Part shown: positions 2,677 through 61,250 of the stretch, piece by piece | How the letters are laid out: each line of letters opens with the position of its first letter | How positions within the stretch are numbered: the first letter of the stretch is position 1 | Virus record (IMG/VR): IMGVR_UViG_3300013104_000001 | Location: 62,001 to 126,000 of that record | Strand: one strand, 5' to 3' | DNA length: 64,000 nt | Program-made: the position numbers and the translations under genes | The notes under the pieces: model-generated | The model's input: only the letters and a program-made list of their open reading frames with translations | What the model was told of the DNA's origin: nothing | Databases searched by the model: none

Positions 2677-2700
2677 TGCTTATTATATAGGTTGTAACTC

Positions 2701-2715
2701 TAAAGAGGTGATCCA
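2701..2715 (+). other. 14/15-nt complement of the 16S rRNA 3' end in an ORF-less spacer (candidate ncRNA element)
   Basis: TAAAGAGGTGATCCA versus TAAGGAGGTGATCCA; no ATG at RBS spacing. Confidence 0.45.
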
Positions 2716-2858
2716 TATCTCCCTTGGGTAAGGGTTAGAACCCGGCCGTGGCAGCATAGCCAAAGTCGTATAACTCAAGTCGACGGATTTTAGTTATTCG
2801 GCGAACTTTGCATTGTATATTGCTCTCCTTTTTCTACACAGCTCAAATCTCCATAGTC

Positions 2859-2891
2859 AAGGGGTAGGGATAACCTACCCCTTTTATGCCG
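2859..2891 (+). terminator. 3'-end hairpin + TTATGCCG tag
   Basis: AAGGGGTAGG-GATAA-CCTACCCCTT then TTATGCCG. Confidence 0.75.
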
Positions 2892-2907: not shown

Positions 2908-3228
2908 ATGTCAGAATTCTTTCACGCATATATATCGTACATCATCAATATTTTCATCTTTATCATGACATTCGCTTGGGTCTATTGCGGTAGTGGTGGC
3001 ACAAGTACTGCCAAAACTAAACTGGTGCGCTATGGTCTACCGACCGTCTTTGGTATTGGGATCTTATTAATGGTAGAGGGGATGGGTGCATTCGATGCTC
3101 ACCTGGAACGCGGTAAGTGTCGTGACCTACCTCCTGGTCAAGGGGTAATGTCAAACGACCGTTGTTACAAACGTATTGACGGGCCGGTGTACATACCTGC
3201 TAACACTGATGTATTTAAAGCGGAGTGA
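2908..3228 (+). CDS. hypothetical membrane protein
   Basis: two hydrophobic segments. Confidence 0.7.
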   Translation: MSEFFHAYISYIINIFIFIMTFAWVYCGSGGTSTAKTKLVRYGLPTVFGIGILLMVEGMGAFDAHLERGKCRDLPPGQGVMSNDRCYKRIDGPVYIPANTDVFKAE

Positions 3229-3232
3229 TCTC

Positions 3233-3433
3233 ATGCACGATGGATGGTTGTACATTGCATTATTCGTGCTGTGTTATATCTGGGGTTCGTACGGTCTACC
3301 TTATACCGGTAATCCATTGAAAGGTATATTGTACCCAGTATTATTTGCACTTGCTGTATGTTTTGCAGTAATGGGTATAAAGGCCTGTGTAGATGGTTCT
3401 ACTGGATATAAACCAAACTACCACGTCAGATAA
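3233..3433 (+). CDS. small hypothetical membrane protein
   Basis: GGAG RBS, ATG 3233, two hydrophobic segments. Confidence 0.65.
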   Translation: MHDGWLYIALFVLCYIWGSYGLPYTGNPLKGILYPVLFALAVCFAVMGIKACVDGSTGYKPNYHVR

Positions 3434-3534: not shown

Positions 3535-4092
3535 ATGGGACGAATTACGAGCGATACCATCCTTGCTAAATTGCGGGAAGTATCGGAAGATAAGAAGGAA
3601 AGCCAATTTAGAGAGATTTGCTCTATCGCACAGACGGCAGCATTCAACGTCGAAGCGATTGTGGAACTCATCGCTTTATCTGGTGAGTTACATATCGACT
3701 TACTTAACCGAAAACATATTGATGCAATCATAGAGCCTCATTACGAAGGTAATATGAGATGCTACAGTCGGATTAGTCGCACCTCGTCTATACACACTGG
3801 CATGACACACCTTGCCGGTAATGCACACATCTACACCAACGACGCCGGTGAAGAGTCTGTCGGGATCGTGTGTGTCCTTAAATTTAAACGCGACTTCCTC
3901 CAGTCTTCACTATTGCCTGAAGTACGTTCTCACTTTATGAAAGCGATTCAAACTCGTATAGACACTCACGACTCAATCGTATTTCACTCTCACCCTGATT
4001 CGGAATGGGGTCCGGTTAGAGATATGCCGGGATGGCATGTGACCTCAGAAGTCCGTGATGACTCAATAATCGTTACTTTGAAATTCAAATAG
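3535..4092 (+). CDS. hypothetical protein
   Basis: GAGGA RBS, 185 aa. Confidence 0.7.
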   Translation: MGRITSDTILAKLREVSEDKKESQFREICSIAQTAAFNVEAIVELIALSGELHIDLLNRKHIDAIIEPHYEGNMRCYSRISRTSSIHTGMTHLAGNAHIYTNDAGEESVGIVCVLKFKRDFLQSSLLPEVRSHFMKAIQTRIDTHDSIVFHSHPDSEWGPVRDMPGWHVTSEVRDDSIIVTLKFK

Positions 4093-4119: not shown

Positions 4120-4821
4120 ATGCTTGTTGGTGTAGTCGATGCTGAATCCACAGACCTGGTTGATACTGCTGGTCTGTTTACCCTTTCAGGTATTATCCTG
4201 AATGTTACTGATCTGTCTGATATCGAAAAACAGATTGCTGATTATAAAGCAAAGAAAAAACCAGAAGGGTCGTTCCATGTGGTGTTTAACATCACGGAGC
4301 AATACCTGCTGGGTCGTACGTTCCTGGCGAGCACACAAGCGTGGTGGGTGAAGAAGACGACTAAGGCTGCACAAGCAGCGATTCTGGAACCGTCCACGCC
4401 ATTGAAAGCTGCCATGGAACAGTATGCCGAATGGATCCAATCTCTGATCGATCTTTCTAAAGAAGAACGCGGCCCGGATTCTTTGGTTAACATTTATTAC
4501 CGTGGTGATTTCGACGGTCGTGCTGTGGCTTCTCTGGCACGTGCCATTGATGTCAAACTGCCTTCTAATTATCGCTCTAATAAAGAAGTGCGTACGTACA
4601 TCGATGCCAAGCTGGATACCGATATTGGCTATATTCCGTGGCTCGGTTATCCCGCCGGTCTGGAGCGCCACAACTCTTTGGAAGACGTATTAATCGACGG
4701 CTTCGAGATGGCAGTGGCGTATCACATCAACCAACTGCAAAAGACCGCATCTAAAACAGTTGATGCCGAAATGCAAAGACTCTCGAAGAAATATCCTCCT
4801 AAGGAGATTCGTCATGGGTAA
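4120..4821 (+). CDS. DEDD(h)-type 3'-5' exonuclease/exoribonuclease
   Basis: ExoI VVDAEST, ExoII RGDFDG, ExoIII HNSLEDV. Confidence 0.75.
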   Translation: MLVGVVDAESTDLVDTAGLFTLSGIILNVTDLSDIEKQIADYKAKKKPEGSFHVVFNITEQYLLGRTFLASTQAWWVKKTTKAAQAAILEPSTPLKAAMEQYAEWIQSLIDLSKEERGPDSLVNIYYRGDFDGRAVASLARAIDVKLPSNYRSNKEVRTYIDAKLDTDIGYIPWLGYPAGLERHNSLEDVLIDGFEMAVAYHINQLQKTASKTVDAEMQRLSKKYPPKEIRHG

Positions 4822-5614
4822 AGAACTATCACCAGAAGATCTTAAAGCGCAACGTCAGGCACGTTTGGCGTACGTAGATAATAGCCGGTCGGAACTGCGG
4901 AAAAAGATCTTCGACAACGGTCAGTACGACAATTACCTGGAAGCGGCCAACGCGCATTTCAAATCGACCAATCGTTTGATCATGGCCGAGCAGGTGTTCT
5001 CTGAAGATAACCTGGCGCACTTGTACAGTCGTTTGGACCATCATGCGGTACCGGGAAATGGCGCGGTGTATTTGGTGGAGCTCGAAGCTGACCCATCGAA
5101 CTATCATCCGGCGCAGGATGAAATGCGGGTTTATATTGCCCTGGGTGTCTTTGACCGTACTTTCACACCAGACACCCCGTGGGAGATGCGGGTACAGAAC
5201 CGTTATTATCCCGACAACGTGTCTGTGTCATTGATCATGACTGACCTTGATGGACGTATTGCTTCTGACGCTATCCTTACTGGATTCCGTTCATTCGACC
5301 GTGGTGCGATCTATGACCGCTATGACGGTAAGCCACGTGAGCATAACCACCACCACAGTATCATGACGGGTATTGTCAACTATAATCGTCAGGTTATCTT
5401 TAATGTTTATAACAAGATCCGTGAGTACGGTGAAGCAGCAATCTTGTTGTTGGCTAAACGTCAGATCGCTCAGCAGGACCCAGAGCTCGGCGCAGTGTGG
5501 TTGCTTGCCGGGTTAAGAATGGGTGTTAACTGGAAACTGGAGAATCACATCGTGCTTAAAGAAGCGATGGATGCCATCATTGCCGAGGAGTGTGATCATG
5601 CTGACCATGTTTAG
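4814..5614 (+). CDS. hypothetical protein
   Basis: AAGGAG RBS, ATG 4814. Confidence 0.75.
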   Translation: MGKELSPEDLKAQRQARLAYVDNSRSELRKKIFDNGQYDNYLEAANAHFKSTNRLIMAEQVFSEDNLAHLYSRLDHHAVPGNGAVYLVELEADPSNYHPAQDEMRVYIALGVFDRTFTPDTPWEMRVQNRYYPDNVSVSLIMTDLDGRIASDAILTGFRSFDRGAIYDRYDGKPREHNHHHSIMTGIVNYNRQVIFNVYNKIREYGEAAILLLAKRQIAQQDPELGAVWLLAGLRMGVNWKLENHIVLKEAMDAIIAEECDHADHV

Positions 5615-6359
5615 AAAGTGGATTGGTGCATCCAGGTCTTTTAAAGAAGACGACGGATCTACTCGGGTAACCGGCGATCAATTCGAACTGACCTACGGGC
5701 GTTCTTTTCACAAGAAGCTTAACCGTAAAGTCGGTCACGGGTTTGGTTGTCATGTCGAAAACGGTGAGAAACTCTCGCTGGTACTGCGTTTGTATTTCTT
5801 TGTGCTGATTACCTGGACGAAGAAGCGTAAGGACCTGACCTGGGAGCAGGACGATAACTGTCCGAGTTACGGGTTTAATTACATGGACAACTCCATCTAC
5901 TTTTACCTGGGTAACGAGTCAGCTAAATCTGGCAAACACATCAGTATGCGTAAACGCATCAAAGAACTGAAGATGCCGTGGGCCCGTACGTTTCATAAAC
6001 GTGAGATTATGACAACGGGTGGGAAGTGGGTCAATAGCAATGATAATCCATCCAATGTCAATCAATGGGCATTCCCAGCGACCTACACCACTAAACACGG
6101 CGAAGTCCAGGAGCTGATGATCTCTGCTATCATCGAACGTATGACCTGGCGTTTGTCCTGGTTCCCGTGGCTACCTTTGTTTGCCAAACGTGTCCGTAGT
6201 GTTGATTTTAAATACGAAGGAAACGGCGGCAATGGAATTGGTCATGATCGCAGCGGTTGGAAAGGTGGAGTGATCGGCGGGAGCGTTAGCATGCTGGATA
6301 ACGAGCACAGTCCACAGGATACGATGGATCGTCTGATCAAAGAACAACACTACGGCTAA
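5598..6359 (+). CDS. hypothetical protein
   Basis: GAGGAG RBS, ATG 5598. Confidence 0.75.
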   Translation: MLTMFRKWIGASRSFKEDDGSTRVTGDQFELTYGRSFHKKLNRKVGHGFGCHVENGEKLSLVLRLYFFVLITWTKKRKDLTWEQDDNCPSYGFNYMDNSIYFYLGNESAKSGKHISMRKRIKELKMPWARTFHKREIMTTGGKWVNSNDNPSNVNQWAFPATYTTKHGEVQELMISAIIERMTWRLSWFPWLPLFAKRVRSVDFKYEGNGGNGIGHDRSGWKGGVIGGSVSMLDNEHSPQDTMDRLIKEQHYG

Positions 6360-6373
6360 TAAGGAAAAGTAAC

Positions 6374-7525
6374 ATGCGTCAATATTTAGACGGGGTTCGT
6401 TATATCTTTGAAAACGGATCTCAACGCGGTGACCGTACTGGCGTGGGTACGTTATCTGTCTTCTCCATGAAACAGACTTACGACCTGCGCCAAGGCTTCC
6501 CGTTGGTTACCAGTAAAAAGGTTCGTATGGATTACATCCTTCATGAGCTCATTTCATTCCTGTCAGGTAATCCTGATATGCCGGGTATCAGTATCTGGGA
6601 TGACTGGCGTGTGAAGGAAGAGATTTCTCGCGAAATCCCGATGGATAATCCCGAGCGACTTACTGCCTGGTGCGAACTGTCTGATCTCAAACGTCCGATC
6701 GCTGAAGCACAGCTCAATGGCATGGGTTCTGTGAAAGCGGCTCATGCTTTCCTGGATCAACAGGGAGTGCCACGTAATAAGAAAGTTGTCCTGGTACCAG
6801 AAGGTGCACTCAATGCACCATACGGGCCAGCCTGGCGCGCGTGGAAGGGTCGTAATGGCGAAGTGCATGATCAGATCGGTTATCTGCTAAACATGCTTAA
6901 AACGAATCCTACGAGCCGTCGTATGGTGTTGTCTGCATGGGATCCCGGTAACATGCCAGATGAATCCATCAGCCCGCAGGATAATGTCATTGCTGGTAAG
7001 CCATGCCTGACTCCATGTCACTGGGCGTTCGAGCTGTACACCGATGAGATCCCGGTTGAAGATCGTATCAATTGGATCGAGGCTAACGCACCTAGCGTCT
7101 GGGATGACTACAACGAATGGTCCCATCGGGGTCACTGGCTAGGTGATACGGATAATAAACGTCTGAATGAGTTTATGGATGATGCTAACGTACCTAAGTA
7201 TTACCTGGATCTGAAATACCATCAGCGTTCATGCGACTACATGGTTGGCGTACCGTATAACATCGCAAGCTATGCCGCACTGCAGCACATGTTTGCCAAC
7301 TCGGTGAACATGATCCCACGTATGTTAGAAGCGGACATGACTAACGTGCATATTTACAATTTCCATAAGGAGAATGCAATTATGCAAGCGAGTCGTACCC
7401 CGCGTGAGTTACCACAACTCACTCTTCTTACTCACTGTGAAAAGCTGGAGGATTACAAGCTGGAAGACTTTAAGTTGGAAGGCTATGACCCACATCCATT
7501 TATTAAATATGAGAGAGCTGTGTAA
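6374..7525 (+). CDS. thyA: thymidylate synthase (with insertions)
   Basis: DRTGVGT, FPLVTSKK, SRRMVLSAW, catalytic PCH, QRSCD, PYNIASY, HIY. Confidence 0.95.
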   Translation: MRQYLDGVRYIFENGSQRGDRTGVGTLSVFSMKQTYDLRQGFPLVTSKKVRMDYILHELISFLSGNPDMPGISIWDDWRVKEEISREIPMDNPERLTAWCELSDLKRPIAEAQLNGMGSVKAAHAFLDQQGVPRNKKVVLVPEGALNAPYGPAWRAWKGRNGEVHDQIGYLLNMLKTNPTSRRMVLSAWDPGNMPDESISPQDNVIAGKPCLTPCHWAFELYTDEIPVEDRINWIEANAPSVWDDYNEWSHRGHWLGDTDNKRLNEFMDDANVPKYYLDLKYHQRSCDYMVGVPYNIASYAALQHMFANSVNMIPRMLEADMTNVHIYNFHKENAIMQASRTPRELPQLTLLTHCEKLEDYKLEDFKLEGYDPHPFIKYERAV

Positions 7526-13219: not shown

Positions 13220-13336
13220 ATGAATGGATTAGTTGTGTTAGTCGTTGCATTAGTGGTTGTTGTCGTGGTTGCAACAGGCATGCATTTGAAGGAACGTAAA
13301 CGTCGCAAGTACATTACTCGCCGGGTAAAACGTTAA
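13220..13336 (+). CDS. 38-aa membrane peptide with basic tail (not in ORF track)
   Basis: MNGLVVLVVALVVVVVVATGMHLKERKRRKYITRRVKR; AGGT RBS; ends before a hairpin. Confidence 0.7.
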   Translation: MNGLVVLVVALVVVVVVATGMHLKERKRRKYITRRVKR

Positions 13337-13343
13337 TGATGAC

Positions 13344-13371
13344 GGCCGGTGTCATGCCGGCCTTTATGCCG
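13344..13371 (+). terminator. 3'-end hairpin + TTATGCCG tag
   Basis: GGCCGGT…GCCGGCC then TTATGCCG. Confidence 0.7.
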
Positions 13372-13493
13372 ACTTCTCATCTTTTTGTAATTTCCTACAA
13401 TCTTGGTATTTGTTATACAAAGATTATAAACTTTGTCCCGAGCTAAGGGTAACGTGAAGAGTTATGCTGGCTAAAATTAACTAAGGGTGTTTT

Positions 13494-15164: not shown

Positions 15165-17066
15165 ATGGCAGCTACAACTGATGTATTATCGCCCCTGCAA
15201 AGACTTCTCGCAAGTGCAAAGGATAATACCCGTGTTGTCACTATCAATAATGGCGAGATGTCCTATTTCCCATTAAGTGATTTAACCGAACAGCTCACCA
15301 ACCTCCTGAGTGTTGATGTGTTGAAAGCCAATGATGCGCTGTGCTTAATTGGCCAAATCCAATCTTTCGATGAACTGCGTAAAACCAAACCACGGATGGA
15401 AGGTGCCCGTATCTCTCTGCGTGGCTGGAATGCCAACACCTGTTGTGGTGGCGGTGAGTTCATCGGTCATCTTAGCAAAGGGAAAGATGATGGCGGTACG
15501 ATTGCCGCAGGTAATGGGTTCTACTGGGAACGTGTAATGACTGACCCGGCTGAGCTCAACGTAACACATTGGGGCGCGGTACCTGACTCGAAAACCGATG
15601 CTGTTCCGGCAATGCTGAATATGTACAACTGGTCACAGGCTAACTACCAAGGTGTCGGTGTACGTTTCCCAGCAGGAACATTCTTTGTCTCTTCCTTTAA
15701 ACCAGGCAGAGAGCTCAACATTATCCGCATTACTGGCAACCCGACCAACTTTGGTTATCATGGTTCGACAATCCTCGTGTCGAATGAAGATGATAACTTC
15801 ATGATTGATCTGACAGCCCGTAAAGTAGAATTGGCTAACTTCATTTTCCGCGGTACAACAACTGTTGATAAACCGACTAAGAAAAGTGTCTACAACAACG
15901 ACATCATCGGCGGTCAGTTCTTTAACGGTAGCTGTCTGCGTTTTGAAAACATCGGTGGTAAAAGTATCAAGCTGGTCGATACCCTCGATACCCGTATCAA
16001 TCAGTGGTATGTCTCACAGTGTACCGGTGATGTGATTACCTCGACATGGTCTGGTCGGGCTGCCGGAGTATGGGATCACAGTACTGCAATCGAACTGTCT
16101 AACTTCAACGTACAGAACGTTCGTGGCGCAATGGTCTTTAATCTCCCACGCTGTACTCAGTCGATGATGTACAATGGCTGGATTGAACACTGTGATGATC
16201 CAGGCGATCTGAACAACGGTCAATGGGTGGTTACCGCGCTTAGCATCGAAGAGTGTAAGAAACCACTGCGTGTGGCATACGCACGTCTTATTGAGACGGC
16301 TCGTAGTCTGCAGTCTGGTTCAAGCATCGATTACACACCAGATCCGAACATCACCGAATGGTTAAGCGAATGGGAACGTGGTCGTGTTGACTTACAGAAC
16401 TACGGGGTTTACACCGATGGTTCTCTTGAGTTCGGCGCCATGATGTCCCGTAACAAACTGAGCAACTCTGGTGTCTCACCGAAGTGGTTCCGTGTTGGTA
16501 AGTTCTTCTCACCTGCTGAAGGTGATCAGATCGATGTCAATCTGGTTGGTACTGGTAACTTCCTCTCAGCCAGCGCTGTACTGAACGATGTCGATGATAC
16601 CCGTCAAGGCGGTGGTAACACACTGATTCGTATTCAGTACAAGAAAGACGGTGCAATTGGCGGTACTTTAATGCCGATGGGTTCCTCACCTATCCAGGCT
16701 GCTAAGATCGTTAAAGATGGATCACGCTGTGTTCTTTATGTACAGCTGAAAGGTTACACCCGTAACGTTATCCCAATCATCACAGCAACGGGTAGCACGC
16801 ACTTTGAGAAAGGCGTGTCGTTCTACTTCCGTGCAGATGTCTCGCCGGTAACCGATGCTGAAGTCACAGCGCTGGTCAACTCGACAGATATCAGCGAGCA
16901 GTGGTCTATTGGTCAGAAAGCAGGTGTCGGCGCTACTAATGAAGGCGACCTGATTCTGAAGGGCAAGATTGTAGGTGACTTCCTGCAGGTGCGGGTTCAG
17001 GTTAACCAAGCCCAGTGGTCGAAGTCCGAGCTGCGCTATATCGAGCTCAAGAAAGAAGCAAAATAA
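15165..17066 (+). CDS. AmsF/WceF-like tailspike-fold (beta-helix) exopolysaccharide-modifying enzyme
   Basis: GGGEF…DDGGTI…WERV…LNVTHWGAVPD, WDHSTAIELSNFN, NGWIEH motifs typical of AmsF/WceF-type proteins. Confidence 0.75.
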   Translation: MAATTDVLSPLQRLLASAKDNTRVVTINNGEMSYFPLSDLTEQLTNLLSVDVLKANDALCLIGQIQSFDELRKTKPRMEGARISLRGWNANTCCGGGEFIGHLSKGKDDGGTIAAGNGFYWERVMTDPAELNVTHWGAVPDSKTDAVPAMLNMYNWSQANYQGVGVRFPAGTFFVSSFKPGRELNIIRITGNPTNFGYHGSTILVSNEDDNFMIDLTARKVELANFIFRGTTTVDKPTKKSVYNNDIIGGQFFNGSCLRFENIGGKSIKLVDTLDTRINQWYVSQCTGDVITSTWSGRAAGVWDHSTAIELSNFNVQNVRGAMVFNLPRCTQSMMYNGWIEHCDDPGDLNNGQWVVTALSIEECKKPLRVAYARLIETARSLQSGSSIDYTPDPNITEWLSEWERGRVDLQNYGVYTDGSLEFGAMMSRNKLSNSGVSPKWFRVGKFFSPAEGDQIDVNLVGTGNFLSASAVLNDVDDTRQGGGNTLIRIQYKKDGAIGGTLMPMGSSPIQAAKIVKDGSRCVLYVQLKGYTRNVIPIITATGSTHFEKGVSFYFRADVSPVTDAEVTALVNSTDISEQWSIGQKAGVGATNEGDLILKGKIVGDFLQVRVQVNQAQWSKSELRYIELKKEAK

Positions 17067-29681: not shown

Positions 29682-29691
29682 TCACAAAAGC

Positions 29692-29702
29692 GGGGGGGGG
29701 GG
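29692..29702. repeat. G11 homopolymer
   Basis: 11 consecutive G upstream of ORF 29713. Confidence 0.9.
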
Positions 29703-29712
29703 TGCAAAGATC

Positions 29713-29901
29713 ATGCCAATAGTTCCCAATGCTGAAATTAAAGCGGTTGATATCCCAATTTTTATAAAAGCCCTTGAAGCACGTCGTCGTGAACGCGAAC
29801 GCTTTAAGATCGTCACTTATAAGTTGACTATCGAGTCGCTGCCTGAAATGTTGTTAACCCATCAACAAAAACAATCGGAGAAATCCCATGGGAAAAGTTA
29901 A
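29713..29901 (+). CDS. small hypothetical protein
   Basis: fills the gap between the two HTH genes. Confidence 0.45.
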   Translation: MPIVPNAEIKAVDIPIFIKALEARRRERERFKIVTYKLTIESLPEMLLTHQQKQSEKSHGKS

Positions 29902-54342: not shown

Positions 54343-54417
54343 AGCAAAGCCCCTTGGGAATGTTAAATCATACTAAACCGGCCTATAGAATAGCGATGTG
54401 GTTCTAATCTCAGTATT

Positions 54418-54442
54418 TCTCATGCCTACATTACATAGGTGA
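54418..54442 (+). promoter_or_regulatory. putative phage-RNAP (early) promoter
   Basis: TCTCATG-CCTACATTAC-atag-GTGA. Confidence 0.7.
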
Positions 54443-54538
54443 TATGTGGTGCAACACAATGTGCCATATTGAGTTGGGTATACTAAAACTTTATTCATTA
54501 TAGAGTTTTATTACGCTAACAACATGAGGGGGATCTGT

Positions 54539-54610
54539 ATGGATCGATTAGTTATCTTTATTTTAGTTATCGTTGCATTTGTAGTCACTGTGGTGACCAA
54601 TGTGACGTAA
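54539..54610 (+). CDS. 23-aa hydrophobic peptide (not in ORF track)
   Basis: GAGGGGG RBS; MDRLVIFILVIVAFVVTVVTNVT. Confidence 0.6.
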   Translation: MDRLVIFILVIVAFVVTVVTNVT

Positions 54611-54622
54611 AAGGAGCGGGGA

Positions 54623-58132: not shown

Positions 58133-58615
58133 ATGTCTAACGGGGTAATGTGGATGATATTAGCAGGCTTTATAGCAATTGGCATGAAACTAGTCGGTAC
58201 AGCAATGTCATCACCGGCCTCGACTGTTGCAGATCTTAAACGCTGGGCTTCTATAAAGACACCAGATTTCATTGATGCGGCTTTCACCGGGGATGCCATG
58301 TTCAGTATCACTGAACGTACGGCTAGACGCCATCTTAACCAATTCGGTTCAAGTGGCATTGTACAAATGTATACAGAAGTATTTGCAGAACTAAAACAAT
58401 GTACGACCATGGATGAGTGGCTGGTATTAGGTAGCATTGAAGATACCAACAATGGAACTGTAAAGATCAACCTGACATTAATCAGAGAAGAAGTAACATT
58501 AGAACGTGAATACATTGTATCCTACTTGCACATCCTGCGAGTCACCGATACGTTCTCACCTGAAATGCTGCGTCGCTCTGTACGTGATGGACTGGTTATT
58601 AATGAAGCTGTATGA
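58133..58615 (+). CDS. N-terminally anchored membrane protein
   Basis: AAGGAG RBS, ATG 58133. Confidence 0.7.
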   Translation: MSNGVMWMILAGFIAIGMKLVGTAMSSPASTVADLKRWASIKTPDFIDAAFTGDAMFSITERTARRHLNQFGSSGIVQMYTEVFAELKQCTTMDEWLVLGSIEDTNNGTVKINLTLIREEVTLEREYIVSYLHILRVTDTFSPEMLRRSVRDGLVINEAV

Positions 58616-58634
58616 AAACTCCTCTACCTAATTC

Positions 58635-58664
58635 AGGCCAGGGTAATTCCTGGCCTTTATGCCG
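58635..58664 (+). terminator. 3'-end hairpin + TTATGCCG tag
   Basis: AGGCCAGG…CCTGGCCT then TTATGCCG. Confidence 0.75.
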
Positions 58665-58845
58665 GTTCATGGGGTAGGTACCTTTTATGCCACTACTAAT
58701 TAATCAAAATGTAAAAACAGTAGATTGGCTCGAATTAGGGCCAACTACCTAACCGACATAACTGCGCTGGGGATCCCAAGTGGTCCCCAGGCAATCCATT
58801 TAACAACATGTATTAACACCTTTATTTAAACCAGGACAACCAAAC

Positions 58846-61217: not shown

Positions 61218-61250
61218 CGGCATAAAGGGCAGGGTTTCCCCCGCCCTCTT
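61218..61250 (-). terminator. 3'-end hairpin + TTATGCCG tag (minus strand)
   Basis: minus strand reads AGGGCGGGG-GAAA-CCCTGCCCT-TTATGCCG right after the stop of 61251..61895. Confidence 0.75.

What the first reader, a model, noticed from the sequence alone, without database searches (positions are those of the whole stretch)
2677..2891. ORF-less spacer with a 14/15-nt complement of the 16S rRNA 3' end: candidate ribosome-binding or anti-SD ncRNA
Seen: 2701-2715 TAAAGAGGTGATCCA matches TAAGGAGGTGATCCA (reverse complement of the enterobacterial 16S 3' end) at 14 of 15 nt. That is far longer than the RBSs elsewhere in the window, yet no ATG ORF follows. The ~230-nt gap is unusually large for this dense genome. 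It also holds three anti-SD-like tracts (CTCCCTT, CTCCTTT, CTCCAT) and ends in a hairpin+TTATGCCG element as if it were a transcript. Inference: a small RNA that binds or sequesters 30S subunits, or (if the minus strand is transcribed) a 16S-tail mimic that masks RBSs.
Basis: partly seen in the sequence, partly recalled or inferred. Interest (0 to 1): 0.6.

Follow-up and report, generated by a model that had tools for sequence, protein, structure and literature searches.

The report
New structured RNA of jumbo phages
The "empty" spacer encodes a strongly conserved, previously undescribed folded RNA of nucleus-forming Erwinia/Salmonella jumbo phages, and the oversized ribosome-binding-site look-alike is one strand of a small hairpin inside it that could still dock on the ribosome's 16S tail.

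Summary
TAAAGAGGTGATCCA sits at 2701-2715 and is the only match with one mismatch or fewer in the window (0 in 100 shuffles). No conserved ORF follows it.

The spacer is a gene for a structured RNA on the + strand, about 155 nt from 2690 to 2843. It ends at a hairpin (2859-2883) followed by TTATGCCG.

I found it at the same genomic position in 17 distinct sequences: Agricanvirus phages, Salmonella phage SA002, Erwinia pEa_SNUABM_37 and metagenomic jumbo phages. The flanking genes are not homologous between the clades.

Helices P0 to P4 are supported by covariation: 93-95% of cells paired and 14-17 pairs with compensatory changes. There is no Rfam, tRNA, E. coli or plasmid match, and there is one copy per locus.

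The SD-like tract forms the 5' strand and loop of hairpin P1.

Every lineage keeps strong complementarity to the 16S 3' tail (-16.7 to -22.2 kcal/mol). That is far stronger than real ribosome-binding sites here (median -6.8), and binding stays favourable after the cost of opening P1.

My best mechanistic guess, at about 0.4, is 30S docking without initiation through a masked SD. This is untested. The minus-strand reading is rejected.

The parts
2690..2883 (+). Whole RNA unit as inferred: a folded body (2690-2843) plus a 3' terminator hairpin.
   Evidence: Conserved at the syntenic site in 17 distinct sequences. The covariance model finds a single copy per locus. The transcript ends are inferred, not mapped.
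2681..2689 (+). AT-rich box TATTATATA directly upstream of P0. It could be a promoter or an unpaired AU-rich 5' leader.
   Evidence: Variants (TATTGTATA, TATTAATATA, TATTGTATGA) are kept in all lineages that lack the HNH insertion. It occurs once on the + strand of the 64 kb window, so it is not a repeated promoter motif. The HNH insertion in Ea35-70 splits it.
2690..2695 (+). P0 5' strand (GGUUGU), half of the helix that closes the whole fold.
   Evidence: It pairs with 2838-2843. The L221/L223 clade shows compensatory changes relative to the SA002 clade at 4-5 positions around a conserved A/A mismatch. RNAalifold predicts it, and so do the single-sequence folds of the 10 lineages that retain the P0 5' strand.
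2701..2715 (+). The 16S 3'-tail complement (the finding). It spans the purine-rich junction, the P1 5' strand and the P1 loop.
   Evidence: The core GRGGUGRUC is kept in all lineages; exceptions are GC in L234 and an AU insertion in the RAY type. The duplex with the 16S tail is -16.7 to -22.2 kcal/mol.
2705..2710 (+). P1 5' strand (GAGGUG).
   Evidence: It pairs with 2716-2721. 93.8% of cells are paired. Pair 7-53 has GC:9, AU:4, GU:3, and there is an invariant G-U pair. The loop varies from 4 to 8 nt and carries an inserted hairpin in SA002 and L219.
2716..2721 (+).
2725..2744 (+). P2: stem 2725-2729 with 2740-2744, and an invariant 10-nt loop RAGGGUUAGA (2730-2739).
   Evidence: Pair UA:10 / GC:5 and pair GC:10 / GU:5 / AU:1, with 98.8% of cells paired. 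The loop is identical in all sequences apart from the R position.
2749..2762 (+). P3: stem 2749-2753 with 2758-2762, loop GCAU.
   Evidence: 4 of 5 pairs show changes on both sides.
2765..2802 (+). P4 long hairpin: 2765-2775 pairs with 2792-2802; the inner stem P4b pairs 2777-2781 with 2786-2790.
   Evidence: 9-10 of 16 pairs show changes on both sides, and there is an invariant U-G pair.
2804..2837 (+). Variable pyrimidine-rich linker that contains CTCCTTT (2825-2831).
   Evidence: Poorly conserved and shorter in the SA002 clade. Its pairing with AAAGAGG appears in the window's minimum-energy fold but not in the consensus.
2838..2843 (+). P0 3' strand (ACAGCU).
2859..2883 (+). GC-rich hairpin, the likely terminator and 3' end of the RNA.
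   Evidence: 10-bp stem. A compensatory pair occurs among relatives. It belongs to a 12-copy class in the window.
2884..2891 (+). TTATGCCG. It contains TATG, the phiKZ-type late promoter and start site for the non-virion RNA polymerase, and serves the next gene (2908-3228). It is not part of the RNA.
   Evidence: 12 copies against 1.8 expected. The TATG consensus with G as +1 is from PMC4666361. Assigning that role here is an inference.

Best explanation
What it is (about 0.9 confident). The spacer is the gene for a folded non-coding RNA on the + strand. It is either co-transcribed with the upstream operon or made from its own AT-rich box, and it ends at the hairpin at 2859-2883. A closing helix, P0, holds a multi-helix junction. 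That junction comprises P1, P2 with an invariant 10-nt loop, P3 and a long P4. The RNA is an autonomous, single-copy unit of one clade of nucleus-forming jumbo phages of Enterobacterales.

How it most likely works (inferred, about 0.4; the confidence value given refers to this mechanistic part). P1 is a weak, G-U-rich masked-SD hairpin. Once the RNA reaches the cytoplasm, the 16S 3' tail displaces the P1 3' strand and pairs with 9-13 nt of the tract. A 30S subunit then docks on the RNA without initiating, because no start codon is in reach.

The docking could protect the RNA, as a STAB-SD does. It could instead place the conserved body on the 30S platform, or occupy anti-SD tails. Which of these consequences applies is not determined.
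For: Shown:
- The spacer is conserved at 75-77% DNA identity where the flanks barely align. The immediate flanking genes are not homologous between the clades.
- 47 of 105 window positions in the 123-column core alignment are invariant.
- Structure: 95.3% of cells are paired against 85% in shuffles and 32-50% when partners are slid, with 14 compensatory pairs in 11 sequences. With 17 distinct sequences the figures are 93-94% and 16-17 pairs.
- P0 covaries.
- Strand: the covariance model gives 87-110 bits on + and 25 or fewer on -.
- No Rfam or tRNA match.

For docking on the 30S:
- The only 14/15 match in the window lies inside this RNA.
- All 16 distinct lineages keep -16.7 to -22.2 kcal/mol against the 16S tail, and the tract is the best site in 9 of 10 loci.
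- The A-to-G changes in the core fall only opposite U of 16S.
- L234 changed its P1 register yet carries a perfect UAAGGAGG.
- The G of an invariant P1 G-U pair would pair with C of 16S.
- The loop bases RUC are invariant and extend the 16S pairing.
- P1 alone is only -3.2 to -12 kcal/mol. Duplex energy plus the cost of opening stays at -8.6 to -17, stronger than real RBSs here.
- There is no conserved start codon or ORF.
- Precedent: a STAB-SD binds 30S without initiation (PMC4113751). Chimalliviruses already target ribosomes with phiKZ014, as cited in PMC12908238.
Against: - There is no expression or binding data of any kind.
- The tract is base-paired in a conserved hairpin, which shows one compensatory pair, a variable loop and hairpin insertions in the loop. 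Intramolecular structure alone can therefore explain much of its conservation.
- A-to-G changes are equally neutral for P1, because the partner is U there too.
- The palindromic loop GAUC/GGUC could mediate loop-loop contacts instead.
- SD docking does not explain the near-invariant P2 loop, the junctions or P4.
- Two other sites in the window reach the same duplex energy by chance.
- The lineages are related, so counts of 'lineages' overstate independence.
- The RAY-type tract needs a bulge to pair with 16S.
Confidence: 0.4

Rival explanations
1. Ribosome-independent structured RNA. It would be a scaffold, decoy or aptamer for a phage or host protein or a small ligand (for example in anti-defence or host takeover), or a ribozyme. 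P1 would be purely architectural and its likeness to an SD a by-product of a purine/pyrimidine helix.
For: Most of the conservation lies outside the tract: the invariant P2 loop, the junction nucleotides CC, G..G and GCG, and the AAGUCG motif. P1 behaves like an ordinary helix, with a compensatory pair, a variable loop and insertions. The neighbourhood holds an Acb3-like CBASS inhibitor and an Rv2179c-like exoribonuclease. The unit is autonomous because its flanks are not conserved.
Against: It does not explain why 9-13 nt spanning the junction, stem and loop match the 16S tail in one fixed register in every lineage while the P1 register itself shifts. It also does not explain why two P1 positions stay G-U rather than A-U or G-C. 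No partner gene co-varies in the loci I examined.
Confidence: 0.3
2. Cis-acting element at a transcript boundary. It would be a 3'-UTR structure that stabilises or processes the upstream operon mRNA, or that modulates termination or read-through at the following hairpin by the phage RNA polymerase (put-like).
For: There is no hairpin or TATG element between the upstream stop codon (2676) and the RNA, so co-transcription with genes 701-2676 is likely. The RNA always sits directly before a hairpin plus TTATGCCG. In the SA002 clade the P0 3' strand abuts the terminator stem. Conditional termination that yields short RNAs is reported in phiKZ (PMC10914365). In Ea35-70 the RNA would lie in the 3' UTR of the HNH gene.
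Against: It is one copy per locus, although the window has 12 such terminators. The upstream and downstream genes differ between clades. I found no alternative pairing between the fold and the terminator. This much sequence invariance is unusual for a stabiliser.
Confidence: 0.2
3. An ordinary small ORF, or an unusual one with a non-AUG start, that uses the tract as its RBS.
For: The RAY-type phages have a 51-codon ATG ORF that starts in the tract (read directly from the sequence). L036 and L221 have AUU five nt after GAGGUGAUCC.
Against: Frames differ even between the closest relatives: the window and L036 differ by a 1-nt indel, and the spacer between GATC and ATC is 2 to 5 nt. There is no conserved start codon, and stop codons fall at different places. 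Substitutions follow base-pairing rather than codon periodicity.
Confidence: 0.03
4. A DNA-level element, such as a homing-endonuclease target, an origin or a packaging signal, or a transcript from the minus strand that mimics the 16S tail.
For: In Ea35-70-type phages an HNH_3 endonuclease gene is inserted exactly here. The minus strand would read like the 16S 3' end.
Against: The covariation includes many G-U pairs that would be A-C on the other strand or in DNA. The minus-strand covariance model score is 25 bits or lower. All local genes are on the + strand. A target site does not need five covarying helices.
Confidence: 0.05

Closest known systems
STAB-SD / polypurine 5' mRNA stabilisers (Bacillus thuringiensis cry3A; by recall, also phage SP82)
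   Same: An SD-like sequence complementary to the 16S 3' end. It is not followed by a start codon and is proposed to bind a 30S subunit without initiation (PMC4113751).
   Different: A STAB-SD is a short unstructured tract near the 5' end of an mRNA in Gram-positive bacteria, and it blocks RNase J1. Here the tract is embedded and masked in a roughly 155-nt covarying multi-helix RNA of phages of Enterobacterales. It lies after an operon rather than before a gene, and its 5' end is unknown.
SD-sequestering expression platforms (translational riboswitches such as SAM-II and preQ1-II; RNA thermometers ROSE and fourU). This comparison rests on recall.
   Same: A conserved structured RNA in which an SD is paired to a pyrimidine anti-SD-like strand through a weak, G-U-containing helix that can open.
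   Different: Those control an ORF that starts a few nucleotides downstream. Here there is no start codon. A terminator and a new promoter separate the RNA from the next gene, and the flanking genes are not conserved.
Terminator-delimited small RNA candidates of chimalliviruses (phiKZ 5'UTR or intergenic RNAs; 201phi2-1 sRNA005)
   Same: Short structured transcripts of nucleus-forming jumbo phages that end at intrinsic-type terminators. Some are conserved between genera, and their function is unknown (PMC10914365; PMC11512511).
   Different: Those were found by transcriptomics in Pseudomonas phages and sit upstream of specific genes, such as the tail gene gp182. This RNA was found by sequence and covariation in Erwinia/Salmonella phages. 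No sequence relation was tested, and no 16S-tail complement appears in the passages of those papers that I read.
Structured RNAs that host homing-endonuclease ORFs (group I introns)
   Same: In Ea35-70-type phages an HNH gene sits inside the RNA, between the P0 5' strand and P1. A new AGCUGU at the 5' junction can still pair with the P0 3' strand.
   Different: There is no group I core and no Rfam intron hit even at E up to 10. The element has no exons and is intergenic in every lineage. At about 155 nt it is too small.

Membership tests
tRNA / tmRNA | Cloverleaf or tmRNA fold recognised by ARAGORN | tested here: not met
   0 genes in the whole window.
Any Rfam 15 family (riboswitches, ribozymes, group I/II introns, 6S, HEARO and others) | Covariance-model hit at the gathering score, or at least a suggestive E-value | tested here: not met
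   No hit at gathering score in the window. At E up to 10 on 2600-2950 the only hits are two chance miRNA hits on the terminator hairpin. No hit at E up to 1 in L216, L221 or L003.
Canonical ribosome-binding site of a gene | A start codon about 4-12 nt downstream and an ORF conserved among relatives | tested here: not met
   No ATG/GTG/TTG in a conserved frame. Frame-shifting indels occur between close relatives. ORFs are 34 aa or shorter and not conserved.
STAB-SD-type stabiliser | An SD-like tract complementary to the 16S 3' end with no initiation codon | tested here: met
   -16.7 to -22.2 kcal/mol in all lineages, with no conserved start codon.
STAB-SD-type stabiliser | Located near the 5' end of the transcript it protects, binds 30S and raises RNA half-life | not testable with these tools
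   Transcript ends and binding are unknown. The hosts are Gram-negative and, by recall, lack RNase J1.
Translational riboswitch / RNA thermometer | An SD masked by pairing within a conserved fold | tested here: met
   P1 pairs GAGGUG with UAUCUC; 93.8% of cells are paired and one pair is compensatory.
Translational riboswitch / RNA thermometer | The masked SD serves the adjacent downstream ORF, and the element is associated with one gene family | tested here: not met
   The next start codon is about 195 nt away, beyond a terminator and TATG element. Downstream genes are not homologous between clades.
Transcriptional (terminator/antiterminator) riboswitch | Mutually exclusive pairing between the aptamer 3' strand and the terminator | tested here: inconclusive
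   By inspection there is no complementarity between the fold and the terminator 5' half. The terminator belongs to a generic 12-copy class. No systematic search was run.
New structured RNA family (claimed here) | Conserved secondary structure supported by compensatory changes beyond the controls | tested here: met
   14-17 pairs with changes on both sides, against 9.5-11.7 in shuffles (0 of 500 shuffles as high) and 0-5 when partners are slid.
New structured RNA family (claimed here) | It is transcribed as a discrete RNA | not testable with these tools
   No transcriptome of these phages is available. A literature search found none for RAY.

The most novel reading that the evidence does not exclude
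A nucleus-forming jumbo phage makes a dedicated folded RNA that docks on the anti-Shine-Dalgarno tail of host 30S subunits without being translated. It would use a masked 'super-SD' as an anchor and its conserved body as a platform-binding module. The effect would be to sequester or re-programme ribosomes in favour of phage messages. This would be an RNA counterpart of ribosome-binding phage proteins such as phiKZ014.
Probability: 0.25. Interest if true: 0.9.

Novelty: new variant of a known kind. Interest (0 to 1): 0.68.

Why it matters
Non-coding RNAs of nucleus-forming jumbo phages are almost unexplored. A 2025 review of their biology has no hit for any of the ncRNA search terms I used, and none has a known function.

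This RNA is unusually well supported from sequence alone. It has five covarying helices, near-invariant loops and deep conservation, while its neighbouring genes have been replaced.

It occurs in cultivable phage-host pairs: RAY and Ea35-70 on Erwinia amylovora, and SA002 on Salmonella. The question can therefore be tested directly.

If the masked 16S-tail complement is functional, this would be the first phage RNA shown to engage the ribosome's anti-SD outside translation initiation. If it is not, the RNA is still a new family to add to Rfam and a candidate RNP, aptamer or anti-defence RNA.

Tried and rejected
- tRNA/tmRNA scan: none found.
- Rfam at gathering and permissive thresholds, on three clades: nothing.
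- Megablast against phages: nothing. Only blastn found the Agricanvirus homologues, and blastn did not bridge the two clades. Pattern searches did.
- The three 14-15-nt pattern scans gave almost entirely chance hits. Relaxed patterns in genome contigs and viral contigs gave two chance hits, in a Planctomycetota MAG and in L225.
- Exonuclease-anchored scan of IMG/VR: no new jumbo relatives.
- Host or plasmid homologue: none in 5,426 E. coli genomes or in PLSDB.
- Paralogues in the window: none.
- The first RNAalifold model, on 5 close sequences, mis-drew P2 and P3. Cross-clade covariation replaced it.
That pairing is absent from the clade consensus, so I dropped it.
- AT-rich box as a repeated early promoter: it occurs only once on the + strand of the window, and once per related locus at the element.
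- Small ORF: rejected (see rival explanations).
- Considered by inspection and not supported: a CsrA-sponge reading, because GGA in loops is not conserved; a tRNA-like or T-loop reading; mimicry of the 16S A site or helix 45; and a pseudoknot between ACUC and the P2 loop, which is possible in some clades but not conserved.
- A sigma-70 promoter and terminator scan was uninformative.
- Complex prediction, structure prediction and fold searches were not used because no protein claim is made.

Full report
1. The observation. The window reads TAAAGAGGTGATCCA at 2701-2715. This is 14 of 15 against the complement of the enterobacterial 16S 3' end. It is the only match with one mismatch or fewer on either strand, and no such match appeared in 100 dinucleotide shuffles.

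Its predicted duplex with GGAUCACCUCCUUA is -19.9 kcal/mol. The best upstream site of 80 long + strand ORFs has a median of -6.8. Two other sites that are not RBSs reach the same energy.

The gap between the stop codon at 2676 and the ATG at 2908 is 231 nt. It holds only ORFs of 34 aa or fewer.

The hairpin at 2859-2883 followed by TTATGCCG is real but generic. There are 12 copies in the window against 1.8 expected, and each directly follows a GC-rich hairpin.

2. Where the window comes from. The window is identical at this locus to a 287-kb metagenomic viral contig (L006/L222).

Its nearest cultured relatives are Erwinia jumbo phages of the genus Agricanvirus: AH06, RAY, Ea35-70, Deimos-Minion and others. 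RAY is a nucleus-forming chimallivirus (PMC10299810).

In phiKZ the non-virion RNA polymerase starts at the G of a TATG motif (PMC4666361). I therefore read hairpin plus TTATGCCG as a terminator followed by the promoter of the next unit. That reading is an inference.

3. The spacer is conserved better than the genes around it. blastn aligns the spacer at 75-77% identity in all 17 Agricanvirus records, while the upstream coding sequence does not align at all.

A pattern built from the most conserved stretch found the element in a deeper clade, at the same position about 1.3-1.6 kb upstream of an Rv2179c-like exonuclease gene. This clade includes Salmonella phage SA002, Erwinia pEa_SNUABM_37 and three metagenomic jumbo-phage contigs.

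Homologues of the exonuclease led to six more loci. In total there are 17 distinct sequences.

Between the clades the exonuclease is only 27-32% identical. The genes immediately upstream and downstream of the element are not detectably homologous. Yet 47 of the 105 window positions in the core alignment are invariant. The element is therefore an autonomous functional unit, not an appendage of one gene.

4. It is a structured RNA on the + strand. I drew the structure from cross-clade comparison. In window coordinates:
- P1: 2705-2710 with 2716-2721
- P2: 2725-2729 with 2740-2744, loop RAGGGUUAGA
- P3: 2749-2753 with 2758-2762
- P4: 2765-2775 with 2792-2802
- P4b: 2777-2781 with 2786-2790

On 11 sequences, 95.3% of cells form standard pairs. 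The figure is 85.2% in shuffles and 32-50% when partners are slid. Fourteen pairs change on both sides.

On 17 distinct sequences aligned by a covariance model, the values are 93-94% and 16-17 pairs, and none of 500 shuffles did as well. That alignment is fitted to the model, so it leans towards the structure.

A closing helix, P0 (2690-2695 with 2838-2843), is found by RNAalifold and by the single-sequence folds of the 10 lineages that retain its 5' strand. It shows A-U to G-C, G-C to A-U and U-A to C-G exchanges between the L221/L223 clade and the SA002 clade, around a conserved A/A mismatch.

The many G-U pairs, including an invariant U-G in P4 and an invariant G-U in P1, fix the strand. 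So do the model scores: 87-110 bits on the + strand against 25 or fewer on the minus strand.

There is one copy per locus and no paralogue in the window. There is no tRNA or tmRNA and no Rfam family even at permissive thresholds. Nothing similar occurs in complete E. coli genomes or in plasmids.

No ORF is conserved. The window and its closest relative differ by a 1-nt indel just after the tract. The spacer between GATC and ATC is 2 to 5 nt in different phages.

5. What the SD-like tract is. Its core forms the 5' strand of P1, and its next bases form the P1 loop.

P1 can form in every sequence. Its loop ranges from 4 to 8 nt and holds an extra hairpin in SA002 and L219. One of its pairs switches from G-C to A-U in the RAY-type sequences.

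The second tract (2825-2831) lies in a variable linker. The third (2849-2854) lies between P0 and the terminator. Neither is conserved across clades.

6. Is the 16S complementarity itself selected? Points in favour:
- All 16 distinct lineages keep -16.7 to -22.2 kcal/mol against the 16S tail.
- In 9 of 10 related loci of 5-13 kb the tract is the single best site on either strand.
- Within the 9-nt core the recurrent changes are A to G, at the two positions that face U of 16S.
- The RAY type keeps 11 pairs with one bulge.
- L234 has lost one pair and shifted its P1 register, but carries a perfect UAAGGAGG.
- The loop bases RUC are invariant and extend the pairing.
- Two P1 pairs stay G-U, where the G would pair with C of 16S.
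- P1 is weak, at -3.2 to -12 kcal/mol. Duplex energy plus the cost of opening the tract in the full RNA is still -8.6 to -17 kcal/mol.

Points against:
- Each of these substitutions is also neutral for P1.
- The GAUC/GGUC loop is self-complementary.
- The lineages are related.
- Nothing in SD docking explains the invariant P2 loop or the junctions.

I therefore rate 30S docking without initiation as the most likely single mechanism, at about 0.4. A ribosome-independent RNP or aptamer role is about 0.3. A cis-acting role at the transcript boundary is about 0.2.

7. Comparison with known systems. The nearest mechanistic precedent is the STAB-SD, an SD-like tract that binds 30S without initiating and stabilises an mRNA (PMC4113751). 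A STAB-SD, however, is a short 5' tract in Gram-positive bacteria.

SD-masking riboswitches and thermometers share the masked-SD hairpin, but they serve an adjacent ORF, which is absent here.

phiKZ and 201phi2-1 have terminator-delimited small RNA candidates of unknown function (PMC10914365; PMC11512511).

A recent review of nucleus-forming phages has no hit for any of the ncRNA search terms I used. It does record that phiKZ014, a protein, binds ribosomes (PMC12908238).

This RNA fits no described family. As far as these libraries show, it is a new family.

8. The HNH insertion. In Ea35-70-type phages an HNH_3 endonuclease gene (L002 1920-2510) is inserted inside the RNA gene, between the P0 5' strand and P1. 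Its TGA stop codon lies within GGTGATC. The new 5' junction carries AGCTGT (L002 1912-1917), a perfect complement of the P0 3' strand. This suggests P0 is kept even across a 600-nt insertion. It also shows that the RNA can be made as part of a longer transcript.

9. Verdict. The solid result is a new, well-supported structured RNA family of chimallivirus-type jumbo phages of Enterobacterales. Its function awaits experiment.

Noticed in passing
window 699, 2884, 3459, 8005, 13364, 17092, 31414, 38120, 38871, 41111, 58657 (+) and 61218-61225 (-): A GC-rich hairpin directly followed by TTATGCCG occurs 12 times against 1.8 expected. It is probably a combined terminator and TATG-type promoter that punctuates transcription units. 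The same element follows the RNA in all related phages; L234 has TTATGCCC.
   Followed up: partly
L002 (Ea35-70) 1903-2510; the same sequence is unannotated in L218 (Desertfox): An HNH_3 homing-endonuclease gene is inserted inside the RNA gene, between the P0 5' strand and P1. Its stop codon lies in GGTGATC. The junction sequence AGCTGT (1912-1917) restores pairing with the P0 3' strand.
   Followed up: partly
window 5523-6356: This ORF matches Pfam Acb3, a CBASS inhibitor (E 1e-47). The same gene is kept in relatives L237 and L240-L243, so an anti-defence gene lies about 2.7 kb downstream of the RNA.
   Followed up: no
window 4120-4818 and 701-1243: The syntenic 'exonuclease' carries an Rv2179c-like 3'-5' exoribonuclease domain (Pfam PF16473). 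The first gene of the upstream operon is HslV-peptidase-like (PHROG 1040).
   Followed up: no
L242 1602-1706: This RNA is a mosaic. Its 5' half is RAY/AH06-type (GGGATGGTGATC tract, ATCTTCC, G in the P2 loop), while P4 and the flanks are window-type. That suggests recombination within the RNA gene.
   Followed up: no
L216 ~3300-3322, L217 ~3655-3685, L221 ~840-872; also L216 3340-3356 and L219 ~6524-6534: The SA002 and L221 clades carry an extra covarying hairpin between P0 and the tract. SA002 and L219 also carry a hairpin inserted in the P1 loop. pEa_SNUABM_37 has a second GGUGAUC in the extra hairpin.
   Followed up: partly
window 2908-3228 and ~3234-3433: Two small hydrophobic, membrane-like proteins follow the RNA in the Agricanvirus clade only. 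In the SA002 clade an unrelated gene of about 210 aa follows instead.
   Followed up: no
window 13315-13493, 29682-29853, 54343-54622, 58516-58845: A crude gene map shows other intergenic gaps of 170-330 nt. The last holds two tandem hairpin plus TTATGCC elements at 58657 and 58684. None was examined for further RNAs.
   Followed up: no
L234 1619-2035, L236 2106-2531: In the deeper clade, a gene with a Lar restriction-alleviation domain (PF14354) lies in the operon upstream of the RNA.
   Followed up: no
window 15165-17063: This ORF strongly matches an EPS-depolymerase tail-spike family (PHROG 4250, E 1e-218), consistent with a capsule- or amylovoran-producing Erwinia-like host.
   Followed up: no
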